A stretch of DNA of 62,987 bases, the filler included, from Lenisia limosa (taxonomy: Eukaryota; Protista; Breviatea), in the NCBI GenBank assembly GCA_001655205.1. It is 9 parts of 9 records of this genome, joined end to end, with 100 filler letters (N's around TTAATTAATTAA, not from the genome) between each part and the next. Parts side by side here need not be neighbours in the genome. Positions count along the whole stretch, not along the records: positions 47,064 to 61,313 come from LPNZ01000973.1; 8 more parts are not named here. One strand, written 5' to 3'. The position numbers and the translations under genes were made by a program. Shown piece after piece: positions 26,641 through 61,487 of the stretch. Within the stretch, counting starts at the first letter, position 1. Each line of letters starts with the position of its first letter. The notes below the pieces were generated by a model that did no database searches, was not told the DNA's origin, and saw only the letters and a program-made list of their open reading frames with translations.

Positions 26641-27154
26641 CCCTTCACCCGCCGCCGCCGCCACCATGTCTACTGTGGGTTCTTGTTATTCCCTTCCCTT
26701 TAGCCATGTCTACTCTGGGTTCTTGCTATTCTCTTTTTCCTTTTCGAGGCGGATTCGTATTTCTGATGTGTCCACACAGTTATGTTTTTGGCCAGTTTTT
26801 TTTTATCTGTGTTTTAAAAAATGTTATTGAGTTGACACTTTGAGTGGTTGTGTCCATATTCCTATTTTACCTGCATGTGTGAATATCATATTATTTACTA
26901 CATAGTATCATATGATATGACCCGTTTCATAGGGGAGATTTCATGAGAGTTNNNNNNNNNNNNNNNNNNNNNNNNNNNNNNNNNNNNNNNNNNNNTTAAT
27001 TAATTAANNNNNNNNNNNNNNNNNNNNNNNNNNNNNNNNNNNNNNNNNNNNTATACATCGCTAAGTATTTTAACCATAAAATGTGTTGTCAGTTCCACAA
27101 AAGAGACAAATACGGGTTTCAAAAACATCATAATAATACTAATAAACTAAACAA

Positions 27155-30100
27155 TATCAGAGTCTAAGCGACAATAACAAAGCTGGAATGTTTATACCAG
27201 GGACTATCAGGGCCCAAAACTCACGGAAGCACTTGCCTTGGCCAGGCGCTTGAAGACTTTCAACAGACAGTCTAGAGCATGAGGGGAACGACATTTCGAA
27301 AGTAGAACGCGACACTACATAACTCCCAAAAAAGTTCACTACACATTGTCAAAGTAGGATTATTCTCCATCCAGCCTCCCCCCCCCCACCACGAAGAGGC
27401 TTGCAGCTGATGTTNNNNNNNNNNNNNNNNNNNNNNNNNNNNNNNNNNNNNNNNNNNNNNNNNNNNNNNNNNNNNNNNNGGCTATCGGCTCGACCTGTTG
27501 GGCTTCTCCTGACGTCATATCGAAACATTTGTCTACACGGTGAGGTTAAAAAACATCACTGAGATAAATGTATCACTGTTGGCCATGCAATAATGTATCA
27601 CTGTTGGCCATGCAATAAAGTCACTTTAAAACGTACCGAAGATAATAGGGGAAGAATCCAATTGGCATGATGATGACACATAGGTCTGGAGATGCGACAA
27701 CAGGAGGGCTGGGGGGGGGGGGGNNNNNNNNNNNNNNNNNNNNNNNNNNNNGAGCCTGTGAGATTGCAAAACAACAGTCCCTTAAATATTGTTTTTTTAT
27801 ACAATGCAAAAATATAATGATGTTTTTCAACAAAAGGAGTAACCCTAGACATTTGTCAAGATTTGAGACCACCTACCAGCTACTGGCTCATGAGATGACG
27901 GTTTCTTCTACAAACAATAAGCAGAGGGGACAAATAGGACCATATTCAGCCAAAACAATCACAAACAGAAGCTTCACTCCTCAACACACCTGTGCTAAAG
28001 TAGCAAGGCAATCGTACACGGTTGAACGCATAACCATTGACGACCTAAAGTGGTATATTCATTTTGTTAATGTGAGAGTGATGGATAAGACCTCTTGTAA
28101 GCAATAATATTTCATGACTCACTGTAATATGTTATGAGTATACTGACCCGAAGCGCACCTTGTGAACCTCGACACATAGTTGATGATGTCGGCGGTGATG
28201 GAGTCATTCTGGTCATTCGGCAATTCTAAGTGGTAAAGAAGCCTTGGATTAAAGCAACAGAAAGGGGGNNNNNNNNNNNNNNNNNNNNNNNNNNNNNNNN
28301 NNNNNNNNNNNNNNNNNNNNNAAATGTAAAATAGCCAGGAATACTGCAAAGAATAATTACCAGAAAACACTTTTTTTATTTTTTTATTTGTTTAAACACC
28401 ATCAATACCTTGTGCTAGAATTTCGAAGAGACACTTCATTGCAGCTATTGGGGTTGGAGCATTAGGGAAGAAAAGGGCTTTCCTGAAATTGTGAGACGCT
28501 GGTGTTGATGGTGTCTTGAGGCAAACATGCATAATTAATCAGAATATCATTTTAAAAATGGCAAATTACAAGAAAAGCCCATTGCCATTACTCAACTGTC
28601 CCAGATACGTAAATATGAGATTCTCTTCATCACATTTACACCTAATAATATACTAAACTGTAACATTAAATTTTGATGGACGACCAACCTGAGGACGAGA
28701 ATAAGACGATCTAGGAGTTCTTGGCTCTGTTGGACGAGGGGCACAACGGCAAAGATAAAGGCCTGTGCTGATGTCGGTGGCATGTGCGTGAAGAGGGCAA
28801 TGCTGGATTTGATCTGTGTGGGGGGATAAGATCATTACACGAGATGTTGAAGTTAATTCGTGGGGGACCAGCCTGTCCAGACCTGCTGTGATGAGAGGCA
28901 GATTCTTGGCATGGTAGTGGTCATGAACATCAGAAGGTCAGAGAAGGCTGGCGAAGCAGGGAGGGGAGACACCACGTGGCGCACGACAAGGTCTATGGCC
29001 ATTTTGGCGGTGGCGGTCTTGGTCATGAGGCTTCGGAGGGACTCCTTGCACGTGTTTTGGATCAAGAGAGCTTCTTCGTCTGAGCAGGTTAGAGAGAGAA
29101 AAGGAGTGAAGATTGAAATCGATATTCATAAGTTGCACTGAAAAATCAGTAGACCTATATAGTGAATTTCATGAAAAATGAAATAATTTACACAAAGCCC
29201 TCAAAAACAAAAAATGCTGCAACTCATTTGTAGATTCCATTCCCACAGCCCAGTCACCAGCTTTGCCTGCGGTGTGCTGAATGAGCTGAATCTGAAGCTT
29301 CAGCATCGGTTCAACAGCAATGTCCCATCCTTTGGTCGCGTTGAGCGCGCACGTCTCCATGCTTCGGATCGCCCGACCGGAGGGAACTGGCTTGTGGAGA
29401 GCTGGGGGGGGGGGTAAAATTGGAAAATTCATGAAACAAAAAAAACCCCAAATCAACTCAGTTGGCTGACAACACACAAGGGTTGAGAACAACAAAACAN
29501 NNNNNNNNNNNNNNNNNNNNNNNNNNNNNNNNNNNCTGTCAAGATGATGTTTTGCAAAGAATAGAGCCGTTGCTTACAGTTCACCCAGGGTGACGCATTG
29601 TCAAAGACCACCGACTTGGCCGAGGCAATGACTAGGTTAGCCGCCATGTCCAGACACTTCGCATAGCTGAATGTGTGACGTTGGACGTTGCAGCAAGTTT
29701 TTTACTCTATCTCATGTTTTTGCATTAAAGCTCATGTGACCCATGTATTATGATTGAAACTTTTGTTATCTCAATATTTGATACTCTCAGCAATCTAACA
29801 CTCACCGTCTGACAGTAGATACGGCAAGCAGACAGGCGAACGTGAAGGACGAAATCAGATACGGACCAGCTTTGAGGACTGAGCCAAAACTCTACAGCGT
29901 TACTCAGCAATGTTTACTCAAACATCAAAAAAAGAAGAAGTTAGAATTCACACTTGCTCCACGCCCTGCCAACTTTAGCCAACAAGCTATCAAACGTGGC
30001 TGCTTCTTTCAAGATCAACAAGATCGTTCCCTGCGTCTCCTGCAGTTTAGCCAGACTACAAGGTAAGGTGAAGTTGTTATATACATGTAAGTAGGAACAA

Positions 30101-32179
30101 TAATTGCCTTCTTATTACACAAAACTAAAAAGTGCCCCTCAAAAAAAAACAAGAGTGTACTAATTGATAAGCATTTCATTTCGGGCTAAACTGAGTTCGC
30201 GGGATCATCGCCTACCCCCATACCTCTCAGGGTCAGCGCTATTCTTCTCCTCAAGGGCCACGAGGAAGGCAAACAGGCTGGATAGAACAGGTGCGCGACT
30301 GGCCTGGCGGGAAAGCACCAGTGTTTGGTATATGATGGGCGGCAGGAGGGAAAGCTCAGCACGGTGTAGCTCTCTGATGGACTTACGACAAAGCTCAGTT
30401 ACTTCGGATTTAGTGAGGCACAGGTCCACAAGATTCGTAAGGAGGCCTGCACCTATGGGGGTAAACTTGGGCTAACCACAGGAGTGTGAAAGGTTGGGCT
30501 AGCCACAGGAGAGTGAAATATATATGATTTGGGAGTTCAAGGGTGAATTACATGTCTTCGAAACCATCTTCTCATAGTAGAAATTTGTATGTACAATGGC
30601 CGTAAGTTCTGACACGATTGACTCAAGATAACGCTCAATGTCCGTGTCAGGACTTATCGGCCAGTATACATGTATACTCTACGGTATATGCTAATAACCC
30701 AATCACATGAGCTGAAAACCACACATACAAACGTTGAGGTTCCATGATGGGTTGTTGGTGTTGTGGCAAAGATACTGAACAAAACGACTGGCAAACTGCG
30801 GTCCCGTACATCTGTCGTCACCTGGTTGGGTCAAAAGGACACTTCTCGTTTTCGCATCGGAAATTAATCCATATGTCTAGGCTTCTGACTAAGTGACACA
30901 TTTAAAAGACTTTTTCCCGCAAACACCTATTATTGCCGGACAATACTATAGGTTCCTCGAAAAGGAAAAGGAATGTTATCATATTCATGTACCTGCACTG
31001 TCCAATCAAAAACAAAAAGTACAAAAAAGCTGTTATCGCGTGCTATCCCAAAACGAACCAATTATTGAACATAAGATTTCTGGGGCTGTGCGAATGACGT
31101 TGAAGAGCTGAGGTAGAATCTCAAGAAATGAGGCTGAAATGTAAGGTTGCGGCTTATGTTACCCCCCCCCCCTTTCATTTTGTGGAACAAAAAGTTATAT
31201 TTCCATATTAGTATAGAAGGGAATAAGCAAGTGAAAATAATCAAAGAAAGCCCCCTAACAGTCTTTAGGTCCGTCTGAAGTGACTCGTTGTGCCATCCAC
31301 TCCACAATGTTCACTGCGTTTTGAGGCTTCAAAAGCAGCACCTTTTGAGATAAGCAGGAATACAGAATGGATGATAATATGAGTTGGATTCTAGATTTGC
31401 TTCAGGCTTCTAGCCCATCCGAACCGGTACCCACAGTATCATTGAGAGACATGCTGATGATTTTGCTTGCAGTCTGCGAGGGGATAGAGCCGGTTGACAG
31501 TTTGTCCACCATGTGCTGTACCACAAACTCAAGCTGGTCGCTACTAGGCTTGCCTGGAGCGTGTTAACCATTAGCTACCCTCTTTTGGAAACTAGCATAA
31601 CGAAACACAAACGGAAATGCTGTTTGTGTCGAGATAGCGTGTTACTGTTACAAACGGAAATGATACCGTTTTTTTATGGTTATCTGGCGGGAAAAATGTA
31701 GAGCTATTAATAGTGTATATGGATATAAAACTTTAATAAGGCTGAAAATAAGCTCAAAACTCACTAGGTTAACAATTAGCATTGTCGTTCACTCACAATC
31801 AAAAGAAGTGGTGATGGTTGATGAATGTTATCCACGAAAGGAAGTCAAGGCAACCCACCTTTAACAAGGGCGTTGACAAATATTTCGGGACTAGCTGCAT
31901 TCTGGGAAAGCCCGTATGTGATATCCTGATTGATAACGGTGACAATATAGGATAGAAGATTACCGATTCTGTCAGGCTTCCTACAAGTGTACACAATTCG
32001 GCCAAAAAACTCAACTTTTCACGTGAATTAATCTAAAAGAATCAGCAAACGCCAAATTGAGCGGCACTGTCTACCTCAACTTCCTCAGGGACGAGCTGTG
32101 AAGCTGAACATTGGACCTTTCCTTCGTCCCTTGATATCTGTAGGATTTTGTCGACCACATGGTCTCCTTCCTCTTCCAT
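27155..32179 (-). CDS. FANCI: Fanconi anemia group I protein (N-terminal ~half; 3' truncated by contig end)
   Basis: MEEEGDHVVDKILQIS start. Collinear FANCI motifs: ELSLLPPIIYQTLVLSRQASRAPVLSSLFAF, ETQGTILLIL, ISSFTFACLLAV, KGWDIAVEPMLKL, AVVPLVQQSQELLDRLILVLRKALF, MRSTVYDCL, QQVEPI. Confidence 0.9.
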
Positions 32180-32229
32180 TTTGAACACTATATTTTTTCA
32201 AAAAAATCAACATATCTTGTAATCAAAAG

Positions 32230-38375
<6,146 letters not shown>

Positions 38376-47063: not shown

Positions 47064-47968
47064 TGCTGCAATTGAAGACGCCCTCAAGCCAATTGTTACC
47101 AATTCACTTTCACATGTTTGTCTCGGCTTTTGGATTCGTTTTTTAGAGCTTCCCCCTTAACAATTATTTAGAGAACTGAAGATGATACTGGTAACTCTCT
47201 AATATGGTCAGTTGTGCGACAGCAAATATCTGAAATTGCCCGAATTGAAATGGACAAAGTAGGCTAACTTTTGATTCTCTGGTGTCTCATTTTGGCAGGC
47301 TATTCAAAAATCCCGTGATCAATCTCGAAATAACGAAGTTCTTGGGATGTCAACAATGGACATAGCCCTTGCCGATTCTCTCATAATGGAGCATCTTGTT
47401 TCTAGTAGGTAAATACGATGCCAGTAAATGGACATAGTGTATCATACTACTATATGATTTGCATATGGTATCATAACTTGCTAATAATATGATTTGATTA
47501 ATTTTGTTTAATAATATCCCTGTGAATTATCTTTTTATACATAGATACTTTTTTGCTCTCTGAAAACACTTTTTTCTTATTTATTTACTTTTTAGGCGTT
47601 ATTGGGTCTGGTGGGGAGCCGAGGGTGGTGTGGGAAGAGTCACTCAGCATTTTGGACCGCATGATATTTGACAATGTAATTCAAACTCAAATGGGCCCCC
47701 TGCAGGATGCATCAGCAATGGTTGGTTGGTTCAAAAGGCGCGATTCTTTTGGTGTTGTGTTTTTTATACAATTTCTTTCATCATCATATTACACACTATC
47801 AGTAAAGTAATATATCATACAAGGGTTTTTAACATGTTTTTGCATACGTTTTGTTGACCTTTGCATTACCACTTCAGACCCGAGAATCCAAGGTTCTGAG
47901 TGAGGTGTTCAAAGAACTGACCACGACATCAGCACAGGAAGTGCTGGATGACGCAATTGATTCGTAGA
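47064..47968 (+). CDS. 3' exons of a hypothetical helical protein
   Basis: GT-AG-bounded exons VVRQQISEIARIEMDK, GVIGSGGEPRVVWEESLSILDRMIFDN, and terminal TRESKVLSEVFKELTTTSAQEVLDDAIDS-stop. Confidence 0.55.
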
Positions 47969-48077
47969 AGAAGTTTCTAAATAATCTAGTTTATGTCTGA
48001 TTTCATATTTAATTGTACAATAGATTCGCCTTTTTGGAATTCACTTGTGAAATCAGAATCCTACTTTACATTCACAA

Positions 48078-50865
48078 TTACATTGTACCAAGCGCAGCCA
48101 TTTCAGCTTCGAAAGCAGCATAGTCAGTCGACGCTGTTGACGGTTTCGGCTGGGCCTTCACTCCACCAATTCCTCCTGCAACTACCATTTTCTTAGGTTT
48201 GAATGTGCCAGTGCCAAGGGGTGCACTTCGAGCGCGCGCTGACGCAGTTCCTGCGCGTCTTGCTCTAGGAATATAAAATACTGCTACCATTGATGCTCCA
48301 AGGCAAACTGGTGATCTGACTCAAAGAATCATAATGGTGAAATTTATGAGAAACGAAAAAGGAGTATTATGTGACCGAAGCTGAAAATAATAGATATGAG
48401 AAAAAAAAGAATACTATAAAAATCATTATATCGTCAATGATTTCAAAGGGTGAGGATTACAATGCGTTACAAACAAATATGATTCCCACGTGGAAGGAAT
48501 GAAGGCGTTGGCACTCTTCATGAGACTTTGCGGCACTGATGACCCGGCACTTACACTTGTCATACCTGATTGGTCAGCCATAAATGAAGATAATATGTAG
48601 AAATGAGAAAATAAAACAAGTATCTCGTTGTATGAGTTATATATCTTATCATTTGTAAGTGTTTATCTATCTGCAAAAGCCCATACGATATATTAACTAC
48701 ATAAAAATATACAGATGAAAAATACACCAAAAACAGCAGTTATTGCCTACCATCCTTGACTGTAACTCTTCTGTTAACCTTCACCTCATCCTTCTTAACT
48801 TCTGTTGCATTCTCCTACTTCAATAAAGAATATTCCTTTGTGCCATTACGAAATAATTGTCAGAAATGTTTAAAAGGACGTAAATGTCACCCTATTGGTC
48901 CACAATAATTTCTACAAAGGATAAATTGATTAGAGCATCATAACGTTGCTTATCAAACTAAAGATACCATGCATTTTGCCAACAACGTTTAGGTAGAAAT
49001 GCCAGGTAAAATTATATTTAGGGCTTTCCTATGGTCTGAAAAAGACCGATAAAATTATATTTAGGGCTTTCCTATGGTCTGAAAAAGACCGATAAAATAT
49101 CGATATTTATCGAGGATTTATCAAGTATTTCTGTCTTATTTGACCGTAGGAAAGACCTAACTATTGGTTGATCCCACGCATGCCTACCTTTACAGCAGGG
49201 GGGAGAGCAGGGGGGCCTGGAAGGGCACCTGGAGGTCCAGGCATTCCTAAAGCGTTAGAAATCCATCAAACACGTTAGAATACTTGAATACTTCCATACG
49301 AATATACAAATATAGAGAGTATAAAGGAGTTTAGAGCCTCTTCTCAACTTATCTGAAAACAACAAACAAGGGTATTTTTATCTCACATGTTTAACATGTT
49401 TAACAGCAAGAGAGCCCATAGAGTCCATCAACAAACCAGTTGGTGGTCCTGGAATCAAAGCTGGTGCAAATGGAGGAGGAACTAAAGGAGCAGGCATGCC
49501 AGGGTAAACCATTGGGGGAGCACCAGGTGGAGGTGACGGAATGCTGGGGGGCTGACGCGGTCATTGGTGCCATTTATCAAAGGTTTAATATTACATACAA
49601 AAAAAAGTACTGTGCTTAAACTGCTTGTGTTGGTATAATATGACCATATCTGATAGTTCAGAAAACAGCATTCATGCAAGAACGTTGGATAACGCAATTT
49701 TACGTCTACGGCTTGGAATTTTCAAGAAGAAATGGGATAAATTTTTCTTACTCCTTGGGTTTTATATTAAATAGATTGATAAATAGTATAAATCTTTTGT
49801 AGATGGGAATCCGTGTCCAAAACATCTTAGGTGTATATTTGGATGTAAGACATAGGAAATATTTCATGCTTCTCCAAAAGTTGTCAATATTAATCAGCAG
49901 CGCTTATCTGTTCAATATTTACTTTATAAATACAGTGAAGCGAGGTTCTAAGAAGAACACCGTGTTTTTGCATAAATGCTCAAGTCACTCACATCTCCCG
50001 GCATGGGTAAATCGGCTGGCATTTCTTCATCACCGGGGATGGGCAAGTCCATAGGCATCTCATTTTCATCAGGGAAATCTGGTACAGGCAAGTTGGCAGG
50101 GGCAGCTATAAAGTTAGAATATCGGTGCTGGGGAGGCAAGCAGAAAGCTCAGATTTGGAAGGCTAATGATTAAGTGAATTAATATTCTACTTTAATCCAA
50201 TATCTCTTATAAGCGCGATGGTATGGACAGCTTTGGCTAGATACAGCCTTGTTTATTTCTAATCTCTATATGTACACTAATAGGGTTCTGTACAGGTGGA
50301 AGGGCTAAAATGTATGAAGAAAAAAGAACCCATCCCAATTTTAAAAAAGCATGATAGGCAAAAAAGGGTACTTCAATGAAAACTCATACGGTTACAGTAC
50401 CCCCAACCTTCATCAATAGGTTTGTATCCAAAACCAATCTCCTTTCCTCCAAAATCTGTTCTTGAAGGCATAGCGGTGGATTTTACCTATGAGGTTAGCG
50501 AGGCTACTATCACCTGTTTTACACCCTTTTCAACAACCCACCTTTCCAATCTCTTTAAGATGTCTAAAATTTTTTTCAAGATAATCTCTCCTGTCATTAT
50601 GCTTCTTGTCCAAATGCCCTGCTGCATCTACAAATGTCATGCAACATAAAAACAACGAGAAAGCCAACCCATTCTATTGATCTTTTGGATTTCTTCAACG
50701 ATATCCTCAACTTTTCTGTTGGACATGACAGTGACTCTGTTGTCTTGCCTTTCTTTTTTGCACTGAAAGTCAACATGGTATGAAAATGTGACCCACTCTT
50801 TTGCGGAATTTCTCTTTTAATGCCTTACGATGGGCATCAGCCGGATTTAACGCTTTTTTACCCAT
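48078..50865 (-). CDS. WBP11: WW domain-binding protein 11 (Wbp11/SIPP1) splicing factor
   Basis: N-terminus MGKKALNPADAHRKALKEKFRKR..KKERQDNRVTVMSNRKVEDIVEEIQKINRM (Wbp11 domain), Pro-rich middle exons, C-terminus DYAAFEAEMAALGTM-stop. Confidence 0.85.
49019..49159. mobile_element. hAT-type MITE, second subfamily, with 43-bp tandem duplication of its left end
   Basis: tagggctttcctatggtctgaaaaagaccg occurs twice; right TIR gaccgtaggaaagaccta. Confidence 0.75.
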
Positions 50866-51243
50866 TGTGAATCAAAGAATGGGGCAAGAGGAGCCTTCAG
50901 TGAATGGAAAACTAAGAAAAATAAGGTGCTCCTCAATTTCTCAATCCTTTCTGTATTAAATCACTCAAACAAAGAAATTATTCTCAAAAATATACGGTAA
51001 ACACAATGAGAGAAAAGTGGAGAAAGGGGCAAAAAAGGGAACTTTGTTGTATCGAAATTTTTCGTATAATTTCAATCGATAAAATTCGAAAAAAAAAGCT
51101 TATGACAATTTTGACCTTTACGGTGGCTATTAAAGCCCTTCAGTCGAAACCAAAATCCAGCGATTTGTTCCAATATTTATGAGTTTATAGCTTTTTTACA
51201 ATATTAAGAGTATATTTACCATTAGCTTATTTCAAATGGATGG

Positions 51244-53193
51244 ATGAAAGATTCAAAGTTGACTTTATCGCCTCCTGATGTAAGTATGGGGCATTTAATA
51301 CTGCAATTAGTTAACATTGAACCAATTTAATTGAAATAAGCTCTTCAGTTTCTCCCCAGCTTCCATGTCAGTTCTAATCTGTTTTATAGGGTGTTGAAGG
51401 TGATCCTATTGACGTATGCGTGTCATGGAACAAGAAAAACAAGGAATGGATGAGTTCACGAGCAACAGGGGACGAGGATGGTCGACCAACGATATCCATG
51501 TTTGTTGACGAGAAATTCAACCTGAATGTGAAAAATAAGGACTCTGAGTATCTTATCACATCAAATGCTTTGCATACGAGAACTCAATCAAGCCCTCCTC
51601 CTCAGTCGTCCACTTTTTCCACTGAAGTGAAAGACGTGAAAGAACCAGGTGAAAGAGAGAGTTCTGTAGCTCGTGAAAAGTCTTCAGATGCTTATGTGGA
51701 TCCTACAGACGAAGACACCGACTATGAGGAATCATTAAAAGATGGGCCTTCTACTTTCTCAAGACCTTCGAAGAGGAAACGGAGCTCTAAAGACAACCTT
51801 AATGTGACCACCAAATTCTCTCTCTTGAGATCAAAGGTAATGGCAATATTTTTGTATTTGATTTTTGGGCTCAAACTGCGGCTAAATGAAGACTGTGGAT
51901 TGTTTGAGAGCAATCCATTTGATGATTGAGATAGGGTGGTGATAGTTGGGTGTAGGCAATGTAGTTTGCACGCCTTCTCTACTTCTTAAACCTAATTTGT
52001 GTTAAGTGATAACTATTGTATCATATTTATTGAGTTTCAGGCGTTTTTCATTCCTCCTTCTTAGGCTGTTCCTGCCCTTCGTGAAGGACTTGTTTGCCTC
52101 AAAACTACCTATCCTGGAATGCGGAGGTGTGACGTGGAAGAGCAAGTTTACCCCCCTCTTTCAGCTGTTAATGTAAGAGGGAAATCCAGACAGTTTCTTC
52201 TTCGCTGCTCTCACTGATATAGTCTGTCCAATTCGGCCGGATTCTTCGAGACGTCTTTCCCAACATTCAGTACTCCCGTCGTGCCCCCACAACAAACTCA
52301 AGACGGGTTCGGTTTTACTCCTTGGCTCTCAATCCGGACCGTTACCCTGCTGCCAAGTCGGTTGATCCCGATATGATGGCGGAAAGCGAAGAACCGCCAC
52401 CTCTACAACCCAAGCGTGATATGTCCAGCATGTCTTCTCCCCCCCTGATCCAGACCCCTATGATACCGGCATCACAGCCATTCAGCTCGTCTCCTGTTCA
52501 TCCGTTGAACCTTCCAAAGTACCTCTGCTCGCCTTCAATAGAAGGCATGAACGCGTCAAATGAGTACGGCTTCAACATGCTTTTACCAAACTACGTGTCT
52601 CCGTCGCCACAGTCGTCACCTTTGGTCACGCCATTACAAAGTCCTTTCTTGCCGCCGCTGCAGCCCCCGATTCATCCTCCCTTTTCGTCCCAGGTTTGCC
52701 TTAAGGTCATTACGAAACCTTCCCTTTCTTTGAATCCCGTTCTCTAAAGCATTAGGTCTTCTGCCACCCCCCTCTCTCGGCACCATTAGTGTCAATGCCA
52801 TCTATTCCCTCCCCGTTCCACTCGTCGCTTCTCCCACCTATTCAAGTATGTTGTTGCGTATCATATCTGATATGGCGAATTTGACAGAAAATATTCACAA
52901 TATTTTGTTGTTTGTCAACGTTTGAGCCAAAGAAGAGGTTATTTCATTAATTTCCATTTTTCATCCCTTCATTTGTTTGTGATGACTTTGGTTGAGAATT
53001 GAAAAAAACGTTTTGTTTGAATTTTCATCATGAGGCGGTTAATTTATTTAACATCACTTGATTATTGTTCACTCATTTTTTCGTCTTTCTGAATACCTTC
53101 TTTTTCTTAAGCTTACCTATCCAGGTTCCCCCAGTGGTTCTTCCTCCTCAATCTCAAAATCTAAATGGGCCTCAAAACCCCTCTCTTTCTTAA
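51244..53193 (+). CDS. RFX-type winged-helix transcription factor
   Basis: Spliced EGLVCLKTTYPGMRRC..AVN|SVQFGRILRDVFPNIQYSRRAPTTNSRRVRFYSLALNP matches the RFX DBD pattern VNAASFGKLIRSVFPNL.TRRLGTRGNSKYHYYGI. It is flanked by an acidic/NLS region and a Pro/Ser-rich tail ending at TAA 53191-53193. Start codon uncertain. Confidence 0.72.
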
Positions 53194-53399
53194 TGGTTAT
53201 TTATTGTGTGTTAATTTCTTGTTATCAGTTAATGTGAGTTGAGTCTGATTGTGTTATAATTTTTCTTGTTTGAGTAGTCTTATGCGTTTTCTTGCTTGTT
53301 TATATATTTTACCGCATTTTATTTGTCACAAAACAGAATGTATGGAAGTGGACTATATTCTCCCCGAGTAATTATTGGTACAGAAATTCTATTGGTACA

Positions 53400-55960
53400 A
53401 ATTAAACAGAAGATGCTATCTCACTTTTCTCTAAAAGATATTAGTGATACTACCAAAAGTATCATATCAGGCAATAAGTACAGAGCATCTGAGTCAACAA
53501 TTCAGACCTTTCCTTGTTTTGGAGGACTCAATGGTCCAGAAGGAACATCCGTTATCGAAAGCGTTGTCCGATTTCGTCTAAGTAATATTATCATATCAGA
53601 CTGATTCTACACACTGTTTGGGATTTGGTAATCATGAATATATCCCCCCCCCCCACGAATTTGTCAAGGTCGAAGCTGGTCGCTGTTCCATTCTCAGCTC
53701 AAACTCCGCATTTCCAAGGGGCTTTCGTCCCTAAACTATAAAAAGAATCAAACAACCATGGAAAAATCCAAATAATGACTGTTGACAAGAAATACATTCG
53801 TCCTGAATTCTCTATATCCAGAAGGGAGGATCTGGCCGAAGCCACTGCTTATAAGAGATATTACACGGCTTCGCCCAGATACTACTACTACCTTGATTTA
53901 TTTTCTATTTCCAAATTACATTATTTACTATAATAGCATAGCAGAGATGAGAAAAAAAAACAATGTTGTATCTGGCCGAAGCCGTCCGTATCACGCTTAT
54001 AAGAGANNNNNNNNNNTGGCCGGAGCCATGCACATCATCACTCTTATATCGATATAGTGTGTGATTCACCATATTACTGATAGTATTAAACAGCAATAAT
54101 ATTACGTAAGCTGGGGTGTTATAATTTTACGTATGCTGGGGTGTTATAATATTACGTATGCTGGGGTGTTATAATATTACGTATGCTGGGGTGTTATAAT
54201 ATTACGATAGTGAAAACGAACCTGTCGGTGAGCAGTCAGGTCTAACGCGGGTTCTCCCATCATCTCACCAATTTCTCTCTCAGACCGGGCCTATTGAATT
54301 AGAGCTAAACACAGCTAAAGGAATAATGCAATATCATGCCTTGAAAAAACTTCATTTATAGAAGTTAGATACTCGGGCTTTTTGACAACAACGAGTATTC
54401 ACAAAATGAAAAGTTAATATGTCAACAGCACTCAATACAAAATTAATACATCAGAGAAAACCTCCAAAGAGACTAACCTTATATTCATCCTTCTTGAAAG
54501 GGTTCACAATATTTCTCTGGTTATAACGCAAAGATTTGCGATTCGGTTCCAAGGGGTCATATTCGGCTTTATCGATGATGTTCAGGAATACAGGCTGAAA
54601 GTATCAGGTATTTTATTAATGTAGTGGCAAAATCATATCATCTAATATAATGTATAATTCACTCCAATTGCAAGTTAGCAAAAATTTGAACTATTTATCT
54701 TAAGCAATTTAAAAAATAGTTATTATTGAACAGCACGAATTGACTGACGGTTCGCAATCAAACAAGACGAAATGTTCTTATTCTCTTTGTATCTAATTAT
54801 ATTGAGAATTGTAGAAATAAGCACATTATCATCATATGATATTATACACATTGAATGATCTCTTAAATATTGAAGTTGGACTGCTCAGTCGGACTGTTCA
54901 GTCGTACCCTAGATAATCCAGAATATCCAGAATATTTCATCCAAATTAATTACACTGGCTTGCAGTATTGGTTCATCACGATGATTTTGTTTATTATTAT
55001 TACTCAAAGCATAAAAGAGGCGTGCAACCATCTTGTATATCGTCATGACTAAATAAAAGAGCATTGATCGTTATATTCCAAACTTGTATTTTGAACAAAT
55101 AATAATAAAAAAAAAAAATATCAAAATTGGTGATTCAGTTCAGCTTTCTGATACCCCAGTTATCAGTTTTCCTGTTGTGAACTGACTGACCACCAGTCAC
55201 AAAACAAACTCACTTAGTACATCAAATTTAGGAATTTTGTTACTTTTCTGAAGCAAAACTCATGTAGCTATTTTGAACTTCGAACATACTATACAACAGA
55301 GTTTCGTACTACGAGATGGAATATTACAAAAAATAATTGGCAGAAGTTGCACGCACCTTGGTATTTGACACGCTCAAGAACTTGCTATAGGCCTCATTTC
55401 GGGTAGCAACTGCTTTCTTGTACTCCTCTCCATTTACTTTCGCACTCACCTCTCCCTAAACAGTCACCTCCCAAATAGACAACACATAGTGTATACGTAT
55501 TTGTCAGGACAATTACTGGGTAAAATAGTAAACCATAGTCAATACCAATGTGGAATTCCCCAGCCCGATAATTATTTGGAAAGAACAGCCATCAAACTTG
55601 AATCTTGTTAAAGACCTTTTCGTTCCACTGTTTTTGTTGCTGTTGTTTCCTTCGATGTTCCAGCTTTTCGATTCTGCGCGTAAGTGATTTAAAATTAGCA
55701 GTATACAACACAAAGCTCTCGATTAATTGAACACACAAAGACATCGATAAACAATATCAGAATTGTCACAAATAGTCGTTTCATATGAACAAGTAAGCAA
55801 CTCCCCAAAAACAAACCTTCCAAGATACTCCGATACTTCAGACACAACTTCCTCCCTTTCCTCTTCTAACTGTCGATATTGCATTTCAGTTTCACGGTTC
55901 TTTCGGGCGAGGGACTGCAAACGCTTCTACAGGGGTTAGTAGAGTATATCGCAACTGGTG
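53400..55960 (-). CDS. FAM228-like coiled-coil protein, multi-exon
   Basis: Exons QLEEEREEVVSEVSEYL, RIEKLEHRRKQQQQKQWNEKVFNKIQ, EAYSKFLSVSNTK and VFLNIIDKAEYDPLEP resemble FAM228 motifs (from memory). Confidence 0.5.
54096..54206. repeat. 4 x 25-bp minisatellite
   Basis: Unit ataatattacgtatgctggggtgtt. Confidence 0.95.
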
Positions 55961-56269
55961 ACCAGAACTGGAAACGGACACCAGTATGTCATACCTCTGA
56001 AGTAATATAGTGATTATTCAAACTCACTTTAGAGCAAGTTTATTAAGGTAGAGGAGGTAATAATGCATGTTGTAAATGAGTGGTTAATTCATAATCATTA
56101 TAATCCTTTGGCCTGGTACTAATAATCAAGGTGTACTCGGTGATAAAAGCAGTCTAAGTCATGTTTTGAGTGTCAGTTTAGTACATCCCATACTGAAACA
56201 ACCAATACATCACATACTGAAACAACCAGCGTAGAACAGCATGCCATTTATATATTTAGGATATCAGGT

Positions 56270-57171
56270 TTCGCTTCTGGAATTCTCCCTTACTTCAGCT
56301 TCGAACTCAAAAGAGGCCATTTTCTCCCGATGCACTTGCGCTATTTTGGCTTGATGACGATCACTCACTCTTGTGTCGACTATCGAGTAAGTCAAACTTC
56401 AATCACAAGACGAAACGTTCCAACCACAGTTCTATATATAGAATGCTCCTAGCTTCAACAAAGAACTACATCTGGGCTTACCAGTGGGTTCAGACGGCAG
56501 GTTTTGTCGCCTCGTTGTTGGTGTCGGCTGTAATGTTAGGCCTCGTAAAGGGAATGGAAAAATGTATGAAACAAAAACAAGCCCCCAAAATCAACTCTGT
56601 TAGCTTAAAATTACGGCACTGATGCATAAGCATGATACCGAACAGAAAGTCTCTTATCACTTCCAAGAAAGACCTGTAGAACGTCCTCCATTCAATCTGG
56701 TTAAAGCCTACTGAAATGTTTGGCAAGACTGGTATTGAGCTTGTAGCGTCTGCACCATCATCTACCAGCATCTTCCACAGCTCTGGTCTTCCAACTTTGA
56801 TTTCACTCTTATTTTCGTCTTCATAATGCCAGTTATCGAGTCCTCCATTCTCGCTAAAATAATAAGACAGTGAGGACTGGGCGAAACCTACCCTCCAGTG
56901 AAAGGAAGATCTTTATTGTTTTTCCCTCCACCATGCCGTGCTTTTGCAGCGATGGCAGGCCGACAAGGGGCTCTCTCGAAGGCCGTGCGAGATAAGTGGG
57001 AGTTGTTTTCCCTCATTATGTAGCTTCAATTTAATCGTTATAAAATTATTAGGTAGGAATAAGCAGAAAAAGGCTTGTTTTCGAAAAAATGTGGTTATTG
57101 ATAAATGGATACGGTGGCGCCTCCATAGAAAGTGCGCGAAAAATGCTCAGACCCTCTCTCTTCTCCGCCAT
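56270..57171 (-). CDS. Hypothetical protein (separate gene or 5' part of the FAM228-like gene)
   Basis: ATG at 57171 (MAEKREGLSIFRALSMEAPPYPFINN); further exons ENGGLDNWHYEDENKSEIKVGRPELWKML and PTPTTRRQNLPSEPT. Confidence 0.4.
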
Positions 57172-57282
57172 TAGCTAATATTTACGACGCTGTATACTGT
57201 AACATTAATATAAAGAAGAGTAGACGGATTATGGCTTTTCCATGAATAAAACTGTTCATTTTTCCTCTACTTACTTGGAACC

Positions 57283-60200
57283 ATGGCACCCGCAGGCGCA
57301 TCAGCTGCAGAGTCCAAGAGTCTTTGGAATTACACTGAAGCCCCGTATGTGGGAATTGTTTTTTGTGTGTACATGCCCCACTTTTCTCGAGCTCTCTGTA
57401 TCGCAACCAATGTTGATCTCACGGTCCAGGGGATGGAAAACCATCGAGCTGGTTATTCTTCGACTATGGATTATGAAGCGAGGCTGGGGTAACTGGAGCA
57501 GTTTACTCAAAGAAGGGTTTGCTTGGGTTACTTTCGGATTGAGCTTTCGTGTAACTCTAACTGACCCCCCCTTTCCCTAGGCTTCTTCCTGGCAAAACGA
57601 ACAGTCAACTCGTTCTTCAGAGTCAACGGCTTGTTGGACAGCAGAGTACTGCAGGTTTGTTATGCACATTATGGAATAGGTTTTGGGAGGCACTCAGAAA
57701 ACTATTGGGAGATTGGGAGTATTAGCATGATAGTGTGGACGGCTTTGGCGAGATACTGCCGTGTTTTATTCCGCAAATTTCACGATAGAATCCGGTAAAT
57801 TTCGATATTCAATGCGACTCCCTATTTTTATGGTGACAAGTTTTGATATTTTAGAATTTGTTGGTCTGTTCATAGACCCTCTGGAGGTTCAGAGAGAGAA
57901 TAGACTAAAAGAAGGATTCGAACGAAAAAACAACCTCATCATTAACACTGAAGATAAGCCAGGGATTCTTGCTGGTGTGGGGTTCATATATGTTACTGAA
58001 GGCTTTACAAACTTGTTTTTCACTTTTCCATGATATTTTTTTGTTTTCAAATTTTCTCACCTTTGCACCCAATCCCACTAAAGAAGCCATTGACGCTCTC
58101 CGCAAAATAAACTCCGAGAAGTATTCTCTAAAGCAAGTAGGTTTTTGGTAGCAAGAAAATACAGTAAATATAAACTAGGGATACAAAATAGCACATTGGG
58201 ATACCTTAAGGTTACCATTAAGTTTGATTCTTTGTTGGAAGTGTTCATAAAGGGATGTACAGGGCATTGTAAACATAGTTTTACTTCCCAAGGATGTTAT
58301 TGACTCTCTTCCTGATCCCTCAACTGTGGCACGGAAGTATTTTTCTCTGAATCAAGTAAGCTAATTACTTGCAAGGAAGATGGGCAATAATTATTGTTTT
58401 GAGTTTTATTGATAGTTTCAAACATATTTGAGTTTTCGTTTTGTTTTGACAGTATTTAGAAGGAAGCACCTGTTAGTCCTCTGAGAGACGAAAAGGGTTC
58501 TTTTAATCATTTGACCCAAGCACAGAAGAAGATCAGATTGGAGGTTTGTTTTTATTTGGAAAAAATACCCCTTTCCAGCAAATTTATATTGACAACAAAA
58601 TATTTCTCAAACTAATTGAATCCTTATTTTTATTCTTAATATTATCAGGTTTTGAACTATCTTCTTGATCAAATTGATGATGAGCTTCATTATAAGGCAA
58701 CTGGACAGTAAGTTGGGTTCAACTGGCTTGCAATTAACAGACGGAAATTAACCACACAGGAGAATCGATGTCGACAGACCAGCCATCGTGGAATGCCCTA
58801 TCGTTAACCCCCTTCCCTCATTGGCACTGGCAAGCCTAATGGCTCCGCCATTAACAATGGCTTCGCCTGAGACCAGTTTCATTCCATCTCCGGTGTCGAT
58901 ACCATCCCCACCCCTCTCCATCCCATCCCCTTCATCATCAGTCCTCTCAAAAGAGGCGGTGGAGTCCATACCCACGTCCTCGCCGCCATCTTCCATCACA
59001 TTTAAACAGTCCCCGTTATCATCGCAGTCGTCATCATCTTTCAAGCCTTCCCCTACCACTTTGCCACTTTCCCTCAAGGAGACTCCTCAAGCAGGCCCCG
59101 TAAGCTCCCAATCATCCCTCGCCCCTTCACCCACAACTAAACAACTTCTCCCCGAACCATCAGAAGAAGAGACGCCTTCAGAAGATCTTCCTGAAAACAC
59201 GCCCATTTCACTGGATACGATTTTGCCCGAGTCTCAGCACCCCATTCTGGAAAGAGAGAATAAAAACCCATCACCCATATCACCCAGTTCCCGCATACCT
59301 CAGATCATGATGTCATCGCCAAAAGCATTCTCAACCTCACCGCACCCTGCTCCCCCTCTCAATTCACCCGTCTTTTCCAGCACGCTCCCTCCTCCACCGC
59401 CTATCAACATGTCCTCTTTTCTATCCCAGGACGGATTTCAACTCGGATCCCTCCAGCCCGAAATGTTCTCAAACGAGATTTCCACTTCCGTTCCAAACTT
59501 GCCTCCCATGTCCCCCTTTGTTGACTCCATCTTCAACTCATCATTGTCCAATACCCATGACATCTCCCCGCTGCAGCCCAATATCCCATCCCTGTTTCCA
59601 GACATCCCCAACATCATCCCTAACATGGACGATGCCTTTGATAACAGCGCACAACTGATTGATAAAAACCGCCCACTTCACCCCGCCCTTCATATAACCC
59701 CTCTCCGAGCCTCACCAATCGTACCTGATATGGTAGCTCCAAAGAAAACTCATTCCAACTTGCCTACCCCGGGTCCCAAAAGGTCAAAGCCGTTTCCACC
59801 CATCGCCAGTTCTCATTCCCGCTCCACAAGTGAGCCGTTCCCCTCCCTTCCTCCAACACCACCGCGCACCTCAGCTCGCCTCCAAGCGAAGTCGAAACCG
59901 TCGGCACCTCCTTCACTTCCTTCAATGTCTCCAGTCCCATTCATCCCATCCACTCCATCAGTGACATCTGAGTCATCACAAATTCCTTCAGCTGTAATCT
60001 CACCCTCAGTGCCTCCTTTCCCTTCTTCCCCTTCTGAAGTTGCGCCTCGGACAGCTGAAGAACTCAGCCATGAAGCCCGAAGCAGCATCGATGAAGAAAG
60101 CCCGGTTCCAAGCCTTCAAGAAGACGTTTTAACTCCTGAGCAAGACAAGCCAAACAACTCTGAGCCCGCTGCCGCTTTCGATGCCACCCCGATTCCATCA

Positions 60201-61226
60201 CAGTCATCACAGGAGTCTGTTTTTGCAGATGAGGAGTGCTTCCCATACTTCAACGAGAAAACCGGATCCATAGAATACGCCACCCCGGCCGCTATTGCTG
60301 CCATGATGCAGTCGCCTTATGATGACTATGGAAACGGGAACGAATCTGACCCCTACGATTATGGAGAAGAGTATATTGATGATGACTATGTAGCCAAGCC
60401 GAAGAAAGTCAAGAAGGCCAAAGCTCCTAAGGTTCCCAAACCTCCAAAGATTCCTAAAGCCCCCAAAGCCCCTAAGCCTCCGAAAGTCCCTAAGGTTAAA
60501 ACTCCGAAAACTCCGAAAGCACCGAAAACGCCGAAAAAGGTCCCATCTCCACAGAAACCCACAGTCAAGCCTGATGAGCCACAAATCCAGTTGAACCCAG
60601 GTAAGAGCCAAGATAAGGTTGCTTTCGGTCAATATCGAGTATCTATCTTTTTTTTTGGACAACATTTGCTCTTGCAACCAGTTGTGGTTTATTACAGGCT
60701 GGATTTGCTGGCATATCCCAAACATGTTATCTGAACTGTAAAGATATAGTCCATTCTATTTCACCACATTCCTTTATCCAAATAGGTGTGACAGATAATT
60801 CGTTTTTCTCTGAAATCGAGTCAATGATTTCTGCAGCAAAAGGAGGGTAGTCTTGTATTTTGTATTTTAAGGTCAAAATGTGTAGTAGTATTTGTATTGA
60901 GTATATGTATATTTCATGAGGGTAATGTGTGGCCTTTCTCATTGCAATAATCTAGTCCAAAGCTAAGAAAGAAATAAATAAACTCCTTGACCATAGCTTT
61001 ACTTCGGCTGGAAGAATTTGACACCAGTTTCGTCTGTTTCCTTGCCAGTAAAGATTTGGCATCTTCCTGACTTCTCAAGAGCCTTCAATGCCCTCAGCAT
61101 CACCTCCGGCTCCATACCATAAAATTCTATTATGTTAGCAAGCGAGCTACTGACGGTATGATGTCTAAGGACAAAGAGAACATTGATGTTATTGTACTCA
61201 TTTATACTTCAAGAAATACATCTTGA
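57283..61226 (+). CDS. Homologue of p1, HTH/homeobox-like accessory subunit of the MTA1c (AMT1) N6-adenine DNA methyltransferase, with a long disordered extension
   Basis: Exons 57283-57344, 57430-57516, 57581-57654, 57855-57953 and 58069-58136 give ESKSLWNYTEAPGWKTIELVILRLWIMKRGWGNWSSLLKEGLLPGKTNSQLVLQSQRLVGQQSTAEFVGLFIDPLEVQRENRLKEGFERKNNLIINTEANPTKEAIDALRKINSEKYSL. This is collinear with Tetrahymena p1 as I recall it (SKSLWNYTLSPGW..FGIGKW..LPGK..QTQRLLGQQSLGDFMGLQID..RKNNCIINTGDNPTKEE). It splices in phase into the long 58760-60600 exon. Exons after 60600 uncertain. Confidence 0.85.
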
Positions 61227-61487
61227 GATTTTATAGTAAGTAGAATATATAATGAATCGCTACCCCCACCTCCCATCCCACACCAAAAAAATATTATACC
61301 CATAATAACTCCANNNNNNNNNNNNNNNNNNNNNNNNNNNNNNNNNNNNNNNNNNNNTTAATTAATTAANNNNNNNNNNNNNNNNNNNNNNNNNNNNNNN
61401 NNNNNNNNNNNNNATCATTTGCCTTACAACTCTGTGCACACAGCTTTCTGCGTGCCTCGCCAGCATACCATAGTATTATATAATATC

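What the first reader, a model, noticed from the sequence alone, without database searches (positions are those of the whole stretch)
57283..58140. p1 subunit of the eukaryotic 6mA DNA methyltransferase complex (MTA1c/AMT1), invisible in the ORF track
Five small exons reassemble into a ~120-aa HTH/homeobox-like domain. It is collinear with ciliate p1 (SLWNY..PGW, LPGK, QRLxGQQS, RKNNxIINT..NPTKE, recalled from memory). In ciliates p1 and p2 activate MTA1/MTA9 to methylate ApT adenines in linker DNA; the system is absent from animals, Dikarya and land plants. Its presence predicts symmetric ApT 6mA chromatin marking in this organism.
Basis: partly seen in the sequence, partly recalled or inferred. 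Interest (0 to 1): 0.9.

Follow-up and report, generated by a model that had tools for sequence, protein, structure and literature searches.

The report
p1 subunit gene of 6mA methyltransferase
The split gene at 57283-58140 is a real orthologue of p1, the DNA-clamping partner of the eukaryotic adenine (6mA) DNA methyltransferase AMT1/MTA1, in an unidentified metagenome eukaryote; p1 is already known to be widespread, so this is a solid but unsurprising new member.

Summary
Observation confirmed. On the + strand, exons at 57283-57344, 57430-57516, 57581-57654, 57855-579xx and 580xx-58136 encode a peptide collinear with p1 (AMTP1). Exons 3 and 4, searched alone, hit only Tetrahymena p1 in the PDB (residues 54-74 and 78-112, same 3-residue spacing). 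A family HMM built without the window scores the spliced protein at 154-165 bits (E about 1e-43 to 1e-46 at Z=1e6). In an unspliced six-frame scan, the five best of 639 ORF fragments are exactly the five exons, in order.

The gene is larger than reported. Four to five more exons (to about 60741) add the HTH-like stretch (similar in sequence, weakly aligned) that binds AMT1 in Tetrahymena. They also add a roughly 535-aa P/S-rich disordered region, an acidic patch and a K/P-rich basic tail. The protein is about 826-856 aa.

Intron 4 is odd. The conserved NPTK codons lie upstream of the only AG acceptor. An AT-AC intron (57954-58068) restores the ungapped family alignment, whereas GT-AG splicing inserts two residues.

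The best relatives are 40-52% identical, and the tree places the protein on a long branch beside early-diverging fungi. AMT1, MTA9, p2 and 6mA itself could not be tested, because only a 32-kb metagenome contig is available. This is a new member of a known kind.

The parts
57283..57344 (+). Exon 1: start codon and N-terminal tail (MAPAGASAAESKSLWNYTEAP; the last codon is split, phase 2).
   Evidence: The ATG sits in an ACCATGG context with an in-frame stop upstream. SKSLWNYT is identical to ciliate p1. S11 and S13 align with Tetrahymena S13 and S15, which contact MTA1. The exon matches HMM positions 6-21 in the unspliced scan.
57430..57516 (+). Exon 2: helices 1-2 of the homeobox/Myb-like domain (PGWKTIELV..GWGNWSSLLKEG).
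   Evidence: GT-AG borders. Matches HMM positions 18-49 with E=2e-4 as a bare ORF fragment. W43 aligns with Tetrahymena W45. The exon alone gives no PDB hit.
57581..57654 (+). Exon 3: recognition helix alpha-3 (LLPGKTNSQLVLQSQRLVGQQSTA).
   Evidence: The exon alone hits only Tetrahymena p1, residues 54-74, in the PDB at E=0.011. Q59 and R66 align with the DNA-contacting Q61 and R68, and L62 aligns with M64.
57855..57953 (+). Exon 4 (EFVGLFIDPLEVQRENRLKEGFERKNNLIINTE). It ends at 57953 under the AT-AC model, or extends to 57974 under canonical GT-AG splicing.
   Evidence: The exon alone hits only p1, residues 78-112, at E=0.033. The RKNNxIINT block was used to fish 21 homologous metagenome loci.
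57954..58068 (+). Intron 4, proposed U2-type AT-AC intron (ATAAGCC...TTTTCTCACCTTTGCAC, 115 nt). The canonical alternative is GT-AG at 57975-58083.
   Evidence: Among all 115-nt placements that keep INT..TKE, this is the only one with recognised termini. It restores the ungapped alignment seen in 22 homologues and scores about 10 bits above the canonical model. U2-type AT-AC introns are known but rare (PMC1557818). No transcript evidence is available.
58069..58136 (+). [quoted passage not shown] It starts at 58084 under canonical splicing.
   Evidence: The family consensus DNPTKEERK.RIEENK.KYGLS aligns without gaps. HMM positions 107-130 match from 58065 onward in the unspliced scan. K112 aligns with the DNA-binding K114.
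58293..58355 (+). Exon 6 (DVIDSLPDPSTVARKYFSLNQ), the linker towards the HTH.
   Evidence: GT-AG borders. It aligns to the family block EVKAIKLP....LTLDEI.
58460..58707 (+). Exons 7 (58460-58543) and 8 (58649-58707), with intron 7 between them. They encode the HTH-like amphipathic helix LTQAQKKIRLEVLNYLLDQIDDEL.
   Evidence: GT-AG borders. The helix resembles ciliate LSTLEKLIHLENLKKEIEMRL and Tetrahymena residues 161-181, the MTA1 N-helix-binding motif. The HMM alignment reaches this stretch, but with low confidence.
58760..60734 (+). Exon 9. It holds a P/S-rich disordered region of about 535 aa (pI 4.5), a D/Y-rich acidic patch (residues 717-742) and a K/P-rich basic tail (residues 743-806, pI 10.8). 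A probable last intron at 60601-60697 and a short exon 10 at 60698-60741 would give a different C-terminus.
   Evidence: The reading frame is continuous with exon 8 across a GT-AG intron. Tandem repeats of 9 and 18 nt at 60418-60537 encode the tail. The terminal splice sites GTAAGA..TTACAG were found.

Best explanation
This is an intact, intron-split nuclear gene of 9-10 exons (57283 to about 60741, + strand, about 826-856 aa). It encodes the orthologue of p1 (AMTP1), the non-catalytic DNA-binding subunit of the MT-A70 adenine DNA methyltransferase complex (MTA1c: AMT1/MTA1 + AMT6/7/MTA9 + p1 +/- p2).

Shown here: sequence homology across the whole p1 N-terminal region (the N-tail, the Myb/homeobox-like domain with its recognition helix, the RKNNxIINT block and the alpha-6 region), plus similarity in the HTH-like helix, where the alignment is weak.

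Inferred from the Tetrahymena structures:
- The N-tail (S11, S13) lies along AMT1.
- Helix alpha-3 (Q59, L62, R66) enters the DNA major groove.
- The loop and helix after RKNNLIINT touch the MTA9-type partner and the DNA (K112).
- The downstream amphipathic helix docks on the N-terminal helix of AMT1.

Together these contacts would let p1 clamp duplex DNA onto the AMT1-MTA9 heterodimer for ApT methylation.

The host is an unidentified eukaryote in ENA metagenome assembly ERZ3820729. It uses the standard genetic code and has short GT-AG introns. Its p1 branches beside the early-diverging fungi.
For: - PDB searches with exon 3 and exon 4 alone return only Tetrahymena p1 chains (7F4L_E, 7YI8_C, 8XYL_C). 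The matched positions are collinear and identically spaced.
- A motif scan recovered 21 p1 loci. One ciliate member hits Tetrahymena p1 at E=2e-55, which anchors the family to p1.
- HMMs built without the window give 135-146 bits (15 metagenome loci) and 154-165 bits (26 database proteins including Paramecium, Stylonychia, Phlyctochytrium and Apatococcus). They align residues 6-176/190 almost without gaps.
- The unspliced six-frame scan puts the five exon fragments at ranks 1-5 of 639, in HMM order.
- Functionally mapped Tetrahymena residues are conserved: S13 and S15 match S11 and S13, W45 matches W43, Q61 matches Q59, R68 matches R66, M64 matches L62 (Leu also in the fungal and green-algal members examined and in some ciliate-type ones) and K114 matches K112.
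- All nine exons keep frame with no stops.
- The literature reports that p1 and p2 co-occur exclusively with AMT1. In Rhizopus, P1 binds Mta1, prefers linker DNA and is essential.
Against: - No AMT1, MTA9 or p2 could be sought in this organism. Only the 32,289-bp contig is available, and it has no DPPW motif.
- Exons 1, 2 and 5 alone give no PDB hit.
- Several Tetrahymena DNA or partner contacts are not conserved. K44 and K46 correspond to N and S, Y63 to V, and D110/N111 to A/N or D/K depending on the splice model.
- The HTH alignment has low confidence.
- The conserved NPTK is retained only with a very rare AT-AC intron. Canonical splicing gives a 2-aa insertion at a site where no homologue has an indel.
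- The branch in the tree is very long.
- No expression data exist.
Confidence: 0.85

Rival explanations
1. It is an ordinary single-repeat Myb/SANT or homeodomain-like transcription factor that resembles p1 only through the shared fold, and it has nothing to do with 6mA.
For: PDB depositors and databases label family members 'Myb-like domain-containing protein', and many carry PF00249. The long disordered C-terminal region is typical of transcription factors.
Against: The PDB holds many Myb, SANT and homeodomain chains, yet only p1 was hit. Similarity extends well beyond the roughly 50-aa Myb-like fold into p1-specific blocks: the N-tail SKSLWNYT, RKNNxIINT, NPTKE..KY.L and the HTH. The HMM score of 154-165 bits covers about 170 residues.
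Confidence: 0.04
2. It is a decaying or functionally altered p1. The original intron 4 lost both terminal G residues, and cryptic GT (57975) and AG (58083) sites are now used. This yields a protein with GILA in place of TK at the start of helix alpha-6, or no productive mRNA at all.
For: The canonical GT-AG pair exists and keeps the frame. U2-type AT-AC introns make up only 0.003-0.008% of introns. The gene sits on a very long branch.
Against: Every other exon is intact and conserved. The two terminal changes (G1 to A, last G to C) are the known mutually compensating pair, set in an otherwise good GTAAGC...polypyrimidine-CAG context (the compensation is established knowledge, not tested here). 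The NPTK codons remain intact and in frame, which would not be expected of neutral intron sequence.
Confidence: 0.1
3. It is the p2 subunit, or another paralogue of the p1/p2 group, rather than p1.
For: p2 also has a homeobox-like domain and sits in the same complex.
Against: p2 chains lie in the same PDB entries and were not hit. The window protein aligns end to end with p1-specific blocks and places its homeobox-like domain at residues 23-69, as in p1 (25-71). In p2 that domain is at 50-96.
Confidence: 0.01

Closest known systems
Tetrahymena thermophila p1 (AMTP1; PDB 7F4L chain E, 7YI8 chain C, 8XYL chain C) and other ciliate p1 proteins
   Same: The N-terminal 135 residues are collinear with Tetrahymena p1 residues 1-137, offset by two residues, under the AT-AC or non-canonical splice model; canonical GT-AG splicing adds two residues after P110. 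Shared features are the S-x-S N-tail inside SKSLWNYT..PGW, the homeobox/Myb-like domain, LPGK..QxQRLxGQQS, F.GL, RKNNxIINT, NPTKE..KY.L and then an amphipathic HTH-like helix.
   Different: - Best ciliate-type match about 47% identical over 143 aa (P0056, groups with Stylonychia).
- The basic K44 and K46 are N and S here, and Y63 is V.
- The gene uses the standard genetic code and has 8-9 introns.
- The protein is 2-4 times longer. It has a P/S-rich disordered region and a K/P-rich basic tail, where Tetrahymena has an acidic C-terminal region (pI 3.45 for residues 261-360).
P1 of early-diverging fungi (Rhizopus microsporus homologue P0133, Phlyctochytrium P0083, Gorgonomyces P0221 and more than 200 others)
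   Same: Derived motifs are shared with the fungal sequences rather than the ciliate ones: LPGKTN.QL, GQQSTAEF and IDP. The highest local identity is to a chytrid, 52% over 130 aa. In the tree the window protein is sister to the fungal clade.
   Different: It lies outside the well-supported fungal clade (99/89) on a long branch. The retrieved fungal P1 proteins are 55-73% identical to the chytrid query P0083 and the 120 listed are 155-329 aa long. The fungal proteins lack the long P/S-rich region with its K/P tail.
p2 subunit of MTA1c
   Same: It has a homeobox-like fold and belongs to the same complex.
   Different: None of the p1-specific blocks are shared, and it was not hit in any search here. 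In Tetrahymena p2 does not bind DNA, but stabilises AMT1.
U2-type (type II) AT-AC introns, e.g. human SCN4A and SCN5A
   Same: It has AT and AC termini with a 5' site that otherwise looks U2-type (ATAAGC), and a polypyrimidine tract before CAC.
   Different: There is no transcript evidence here. The 5' site does not match the U12 consensus ATATCC, so it is not a minor-spliceosome intron by sequence (judged by eye).

Membership tests
p1 / AMTP1 subunit of the AMT1 (MTA1c) 6mA methyltransferase complex | An N-terminal tail carrying the S-x-S residues (Tetrahymena S13 and S15) that contact MTA1, inside the conserved SKSLWNYT..PGW block. | tested here: met
   The window reads ESKSLWNYTEAPGW. S11 and S13 are in register with S13 and S15. 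HMM positions 6-21 match exon 1 in the unspliced scan.
p1 / AMTP1 subunit of the AMT1 (MTA1c) 6mA methyltransferase complex | A homeobox/Myb-like domain whose alpha-2 (K44, W45, K46) and alpha-3 recognition helix (Q61, Y63, M64, R68) bind DNA. | tested here: met
   The fold-defining block and W43, Q59, L62 and R66 are conserved. K44 and K46 correspond to N42 and S44, and Y63 to V61, so these are not conserved; the same positions also vary in fungal and algal members.
p1 / AMTP1 subunit of the AMT1 (MTA1c) 6mA methyltransferase complex | The helical region after the homeobox-like domain, with F.GL...RKNNxI(I/V)N(T/S), the most conserved block of the family. | tested here: met
   FVGLFID...RKNNLIINT is present. 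Exon 4 alone hits only p1 in the PDB, and the same motif retrieved 21 p1 loci.
p1 / AMTP1 subunit of the AMT1 (MTA1c) 6mA methyltransferase complex | [quoted passage not shown] | tested here: inconclusive
   The residues are encoded (NPTKE at 58071) and align without gaps only if intron 4 is AT-AC (57954-58068). GT-AG splicing gives EDKPGILAE, two residues longer and without K114. No cDNA is available.
p1 / AMTP1 subunit of the AMT1 (MTA1c) 6mA methyltransferase complex | The HTH-like motif (Tetrahymena 152-183; L167, L170, I177, L181) that binds the N-terminal helix of MTA1. | tested here: inconclusive
   An amphipathic helix, LTQAQKKIRLEVLNYLLDQI, sits at the right distance and shares the (E/Q)K.I.LE.L pattern with ciliate sequences. 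The HMM alignment there has low confidence.
p1 / AMTP1 subunit of the AMT1 (MTA1c) 6mA methyltransferase complex | It is closer to p1 than to p2 or to generic Myb, SANT or homeodomain proteins. | tested here: met
   The only PDB hits are p1 chains. The family HMM gives E of about 1e-46.
p1 / AMTP1 subunit of the AMT1 (MTA1c) 6mA methyltransferase complex | Genes for AMT1/MTA1 (DPPW MT-A70) and AMT6/7/MTA9 are present in the same genome. | not testable with these tools
   Only contig NODE_269 (32,289 bp) of ERZ3820729 is reachable. It has no DPPW in any frame and no MT-A70 Pfam hit among its called genes.
p1 / AMTP1 subunit of the AMT1 (MTA1c) 6mA methyltransferase complex | It assembles with AMT1 and is required for ApT methylation, and the genome carries symmetric 6mApT. 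| not testable with these tools
   This needs biochemistry or native long-read data. It is known for Tetrahymena, Oxytricha and Rhizopus.
U2-type AT-AC (type II) intron | AT and AC termini with an otherwise U2-like 5' splice site and polypyrimidine tract, and no U12 5' site or branch consensus. | tested here: met
   The junction reads G|ATAAGCCAGG...TTTTCTCACCTTTGCAC|CC. The definition follows PMC1557818. Absence of the U12 consensus was judged by eye.
U2-type AT-AC (type II) intron | A spliced junction observed in mRNA. | not testable with these tools
   No transcript data were available for this organism.

The most novel reading that the evidence does not exclude
The gene comes from an unsampled deep eukaryotic lineage near the base of the fungi or Holomycota that runs the AMT1 6mA pathway with an unusual long-form p1. 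In this reading the p1 core is fused to a roughly 535-aa disordered region and a histone-H1-like K/P-rich basic tail. That tail could itself tether the methyltransferase to linker DNA. The gene would also be spliced through one of the very rare U2-type AT-AC introns.
Probability: 0.2. Interest if true: 0.5.

Novelty: new member of a known kind. Interest (0 to 1): 0.35.

Why it matters
The result shows that a six-frame or ORF-based view of metagenome contigs misses small-exon eukaryotic chromatin genes. The only database trace of this gene was a 90-aa prokaryote-style ORF call. A single conserved 9-residue block was enough to recover a whole family.

Because p1 co-occurs exclusively with AMT1 in surveyed eukaryotes, this gene marks its host as a likely 6mApT-using organism. 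The host lineage has no close sequenced relative, which adds a data point to the distribution of the pathway.

Two features give concrete, cheap experiments: the long basic-tailed architecture and the candidate AT-AC intron. Neither changes the current picture of the system.

Tried and rejected
1. PDB searches with exon 2, exon 5 and exon 1 alone gave no p1 hit, because the pieces are too short or too divergent. One search was run one base out of frame and is void.
2. Pfam on single exons and neighbouring ORFs found nothing for the exons.
3. The exhaustive representative search with the 39-aa exon 4 returned only the window's own 90-aa ORF, P0001. No close relative has this exon called.
4. The search for related loci in the metagenomes failed twice. 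The exon query was too short, and with P0001 there were 423 pattern matches but no confirmed relative.
5. About 100 of the 120 loci from the RKNNxIINT scan were chance matches or unrelated. One recurrent group reads RKNNFIINTILEVNHDFDIIFIQEPSW, which looks like a retroelement endonuclease domain.
6. Organism identification was attempted by walking the whole contig, by Pfam on its ORFs and by a homology search with the Phosphodiest exon, whose best hits were unnamed at 33% identity. A paper search for ERZ3820729 found nothing. The organism was not resolved.
7. A junction that keeps EDKPTKE (model B, GG..CC termini) was rejected because it has no plausible splice sites. It scores the same as the AT-AC model.
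8. Structure prediction and fold search of the spliced protein were not run.
9. Mapping of the Rhizopus N106 and N110 residues was dropped, because the numbering of the retrieved strain's protein did not match.
Full report
**Source of the sequence.** The finding's piece (47064-61313) is positions 17997-32246 of ENA metagenome contig ERZ3820729 NODE_269. The contig is 32,289 bp long at about 33x coverage. The piece is identical to the record except for 10 N at 54007-54016, which replace about 18 real bases. GC content is about 40%.

**The observation.** Reading the three + frames and joining by splice sites gives these exons:
- Exon 1: 57283-57344, MAPAGASAAESKSLWNYTEAP
- Exon 2: 57430-57516
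- Exon 3: 57581-57654
- Exon 4: from 57855
- Exon 5: ending at 58136

Introns 1-3 are GT-AG with good consensus.

**Statistical support.** Three independent tests were run.
- Exon 3 (24 aa) and exon 4 (39 aa), each searched alone against 177,635 PDB sequences, returned nothing but the three Tetrahymena p1 sequences. Exon 3 matched residues 54-74 (E=0.011) and exon 4 matched 78-112 (E=0.033). Three residues lie between the two matches in both proteins, which also confirms the phase-1 junction.
- A back-translated RKNNxIINT pattern scanned over public metagenome contigs gave 120 loci. Twenty-one of them are clearly p1 genes, mostly in the ciliate genetic code. One of these, L035, hits Tetrahymena p1 residues 30-182 at E=2e-55. 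A profile of 15 of these loci scores the spliced window protein at 135-146 bits. A second profile of 26 database proteins (Paramecium, Pseudocohnilembus, Stylonychia, the chytrid Phlyctochytrium, the green alga Apatococcus and unnamed ones) scores it at 154-165 bits. That corresponds to E of about 1e-43 to 1e-46 at Z=1e6, aligned over residues 6-176 with almost no gaps.
- With no gene model at all, the second profile was run over all 639 stop-to-stop fragments of the piece. It ranks the five exon-bearing fragments first to fifth. They match profile positions 6-21, 18-49, 50-75, 75-110 and 107-130, in genomic order on the + strand.

**Full extent of the gene.** The gene does not stop at 58140. 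GT-AG introns link further exons at 58293-58355, 58460-58543, 58649-58707 and 58760 onward, into the 648-aa ORF that the mechanical ORF list shows. Exons 6-8 align with the family's EVKAIKLP...LTLDEI...LSTLEKLIHLENL region. In Tetrahymena, residues 152-183 of that region form the HTH-like motif whose L167, L170, I177 and L181 bind the N-terminal helix of MTA1. The window has LTQAQKKIRLEVLNYLLDQI at this position. The pattern is shared, but the alignment confidence is low.

Exon 9 encodes, in order:
- a P/S-rich region of about 535 aa (pI 4.5)
- a D/Y-rich acidic patch
- a 64-residue K/P-rich tail (pI 10.8), built from 9- and 18-nt tandem repeats

A probable last intron at 60601-60697 would give a short alternative C-terminus. 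The protein is therefore about 826-856 aa. Ciliate and fungal p1 proteins are about 155-360 aa.

**Intron 4.** The family reads ...RKNNxIINTGDNPTKEERK.RIEENK.KYGLS, with no indel in any of 22 aligned homologues. The window encodes INTEDKP at the end of the exon-4 frame and NPTKEAIDALRKINSEKYSL in the exon-5 frame. However, the only AG acceptor (58082-83) lies after NPTK.
- Canonical splicing (GT at 57975, AG at 58083) gives EDKPGILAEAIDAL. This is two residues longer and lacks the Lys equivalent to the DNA-binding K114.
- Sliding a 115-nt intron over every position that keeps INT..TKE yields exactly one placement with recognised termini, 57954-58068. It reads G|ATAAGCC...TTTTCTCACCTTTGCAC|CC.
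- That sequence is a good GTAAGC...CAG intron with both terminal G residues changed to the A/C pair. From established knowledge, not tested here, the A/C pair is the compensating combination.
- This placement gives INTEANPTKEAIDAL, which is ungapped with the family and scores about 10 bits higher than the canonical model.
- U2-type AT-AC introns exist but are only 0.003-0.008% of introns (PMC1557818).

I favour the AT-AC reading at about 0.6-0.65, with about 0.3 for the canonical junction. Only a transcript can settle it.

**How it most likely works.** The mechanism is inferred from the Tetrahymena cryo-EM and mutagenesis work (PMC12485025 and PMC9852454).
- The p1 N-terminal region clamps duplex DNA onto the MTA1-MTA9 heterodimer. 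Alpha-3 sits in the major groove (Q61, Y63, M64, R68), alpha-2 lies on the backbone (K44, W45, K46) and alpha-6 contributes K114.
- The N-tail (S13, S15) runs along MTA1.
- The HTH docks on the MTA1 N-helix.

With a constant offset of two residues, the window conserves S11 and S13, W43, Q59, R66, L62 (for M64; Leu also in the fungal and green-algal members examined and in some ciliate-type ones) and K112 (under the AT-AC or non-canonical splice models). It does not conserve K44, K46 or Y63. In Rhizopus microsporus, P1 binds Mta1, prefers linker DNA and is essential (PMC12019607).

The homology is shown here. Complex formation and ApT methylation in this organism are inferred.

**Which organism.** The gene uses the standard code and has introns of 64-200 nt. 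The DNA is gene-sparse.
- Best identities are 40-52% to chytrid, Kickxellomycotina, Glomeromycotina and ciliate-type proteins alike.
- The window shares LPGKTN.QL, GQQSTAEF and IDP with fungal P1 rather than ciliate p1.
- A maximum-likelihood tree of 53 sequences places it on a very long branch, sister to a well-supported clade of early-diverging fungi. That clade has 99/89 support, and the split of fungi plus window from the rest has 96/78. Long branches are placed unreliably.
- The rest of the contig gave only a Phosphodiest (PF01663) gene, whose best relatives are unnamed at 33% identity.

The host remains unidentified.

**What could not be tested.** AMT1, MTA9 and p2 could not be sought, because no access to the rest of the assembly was available. 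The contig itself has no DPPW motif in any frame.

**Novelty.** The p1 and p2 subunits were described with the complex. [quoted passage not shown] They are also reported to co-occur exclusively with AMT1 in a survey of 231 eukaryotes that traces the pathway to LECA (PMC12695648). One search retrieved more than 200 fungal homologues. This is therefore a new, divergent member of a known family. It has two unusual but secondary features: the long disordered, K/P-tailed architecture and the candidate AT-AC intron.

Noticed in passing
window 57954-58068 (alternative 57975-58083): Intron 4 looks like a rare U2-type AT-AC intron (ATAAGC...CAC). Both flanks carry part of the family motif: EDKP on the left and NPTKE on the right. 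No explanation tried here fully accounts for that duplication; intron sliding or a target-site duplication at intron gain are possibilities.
   Followed up: partly
window 58760-60600, especially 60418-60537: The C-terminal two thirds of the protein is a P/S-rich disordered region. It is followed by a D/Y-rich acidic patch and a histone-H1-like K/P-rich tail (KAPK, KTPK and KPPK repeats) encoded by 9- and 18-nt tandem repeats. None of the p1 homologues retrieved or aligned here has such a tail, and the Tetrahymena p1 C-terminal region is acidic.
   Followed up: partly
window 60601-60741: A strong donor (CCAG|GTAAGA) and acceptor (TTATTACAG|GC) suggest one more short intron and a 14-residue terminal exon. 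The alternative is read-through to the TGA at 60734.
   Followed up: partly
window 56493-56912 (- strand): A minus-strand ORF fragment with a weak PBDC1 (PF04669) match (E=0.032, below the Pfam cutoff) lies head to head with the p1 gene, about 370 bp from its ATG. The two may share a bidirectional promoter.
   Followed up: no
window 51390-52744 (+ strand): Two long ORF fragments of a second S/P-rich gene lie here. The stretch FGRILRDVFPNIQYSRR...RFYSLAL resembles, by eye, the second half of an RFX winged-helix DNA-binding domain. Pfam gave no hit.
   Followed up: partly
window 54007-54016 and about 54100-54215: The 10 N in the window replace about 18 real bases present in the ENA record. About 100 nt downstream there is a four-copy tandem repeat of about 26 nt, seen in the printed sequence.
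   Followed up: no
L002 15579-17395 (- strand; contig region outside the window piece): A split gene for a type I phosphodiesterase/nucleotide pyrophosphatase (PF01663) is the only other recognisable gene on the 32-kb contig. Its best relatives are only 33% identical and unnamed.
   Followed up: partly
loci L006, L021, L027, L031, L039, L051, L057, L072-L075 and others: Many chance hits of the RKNNxIINT DNA pattern fall in one repeated element, reading RKNN(F/I)IINTILEVNHDFD(I/V)IFIQEPSW. It is probably the endonuclease domain of a retroelement that is abundant in certain JGI metagenomes.
   Followed up: no
L106 884-1327 and L004, L055, L068, L085, L089: L106 is a Tetrahymena-like p1 gene with the same residue numbering as the solved protein, interrupted by an intron after residue ~125. 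A second group of ciliate-code loci (L004, L068, L085, L089) carries a GPEI(I/Q) insertion before RKNN, and L055 a related GPNVV one; Stylonychia-type proteins show the same insertion.
   Followed up: no
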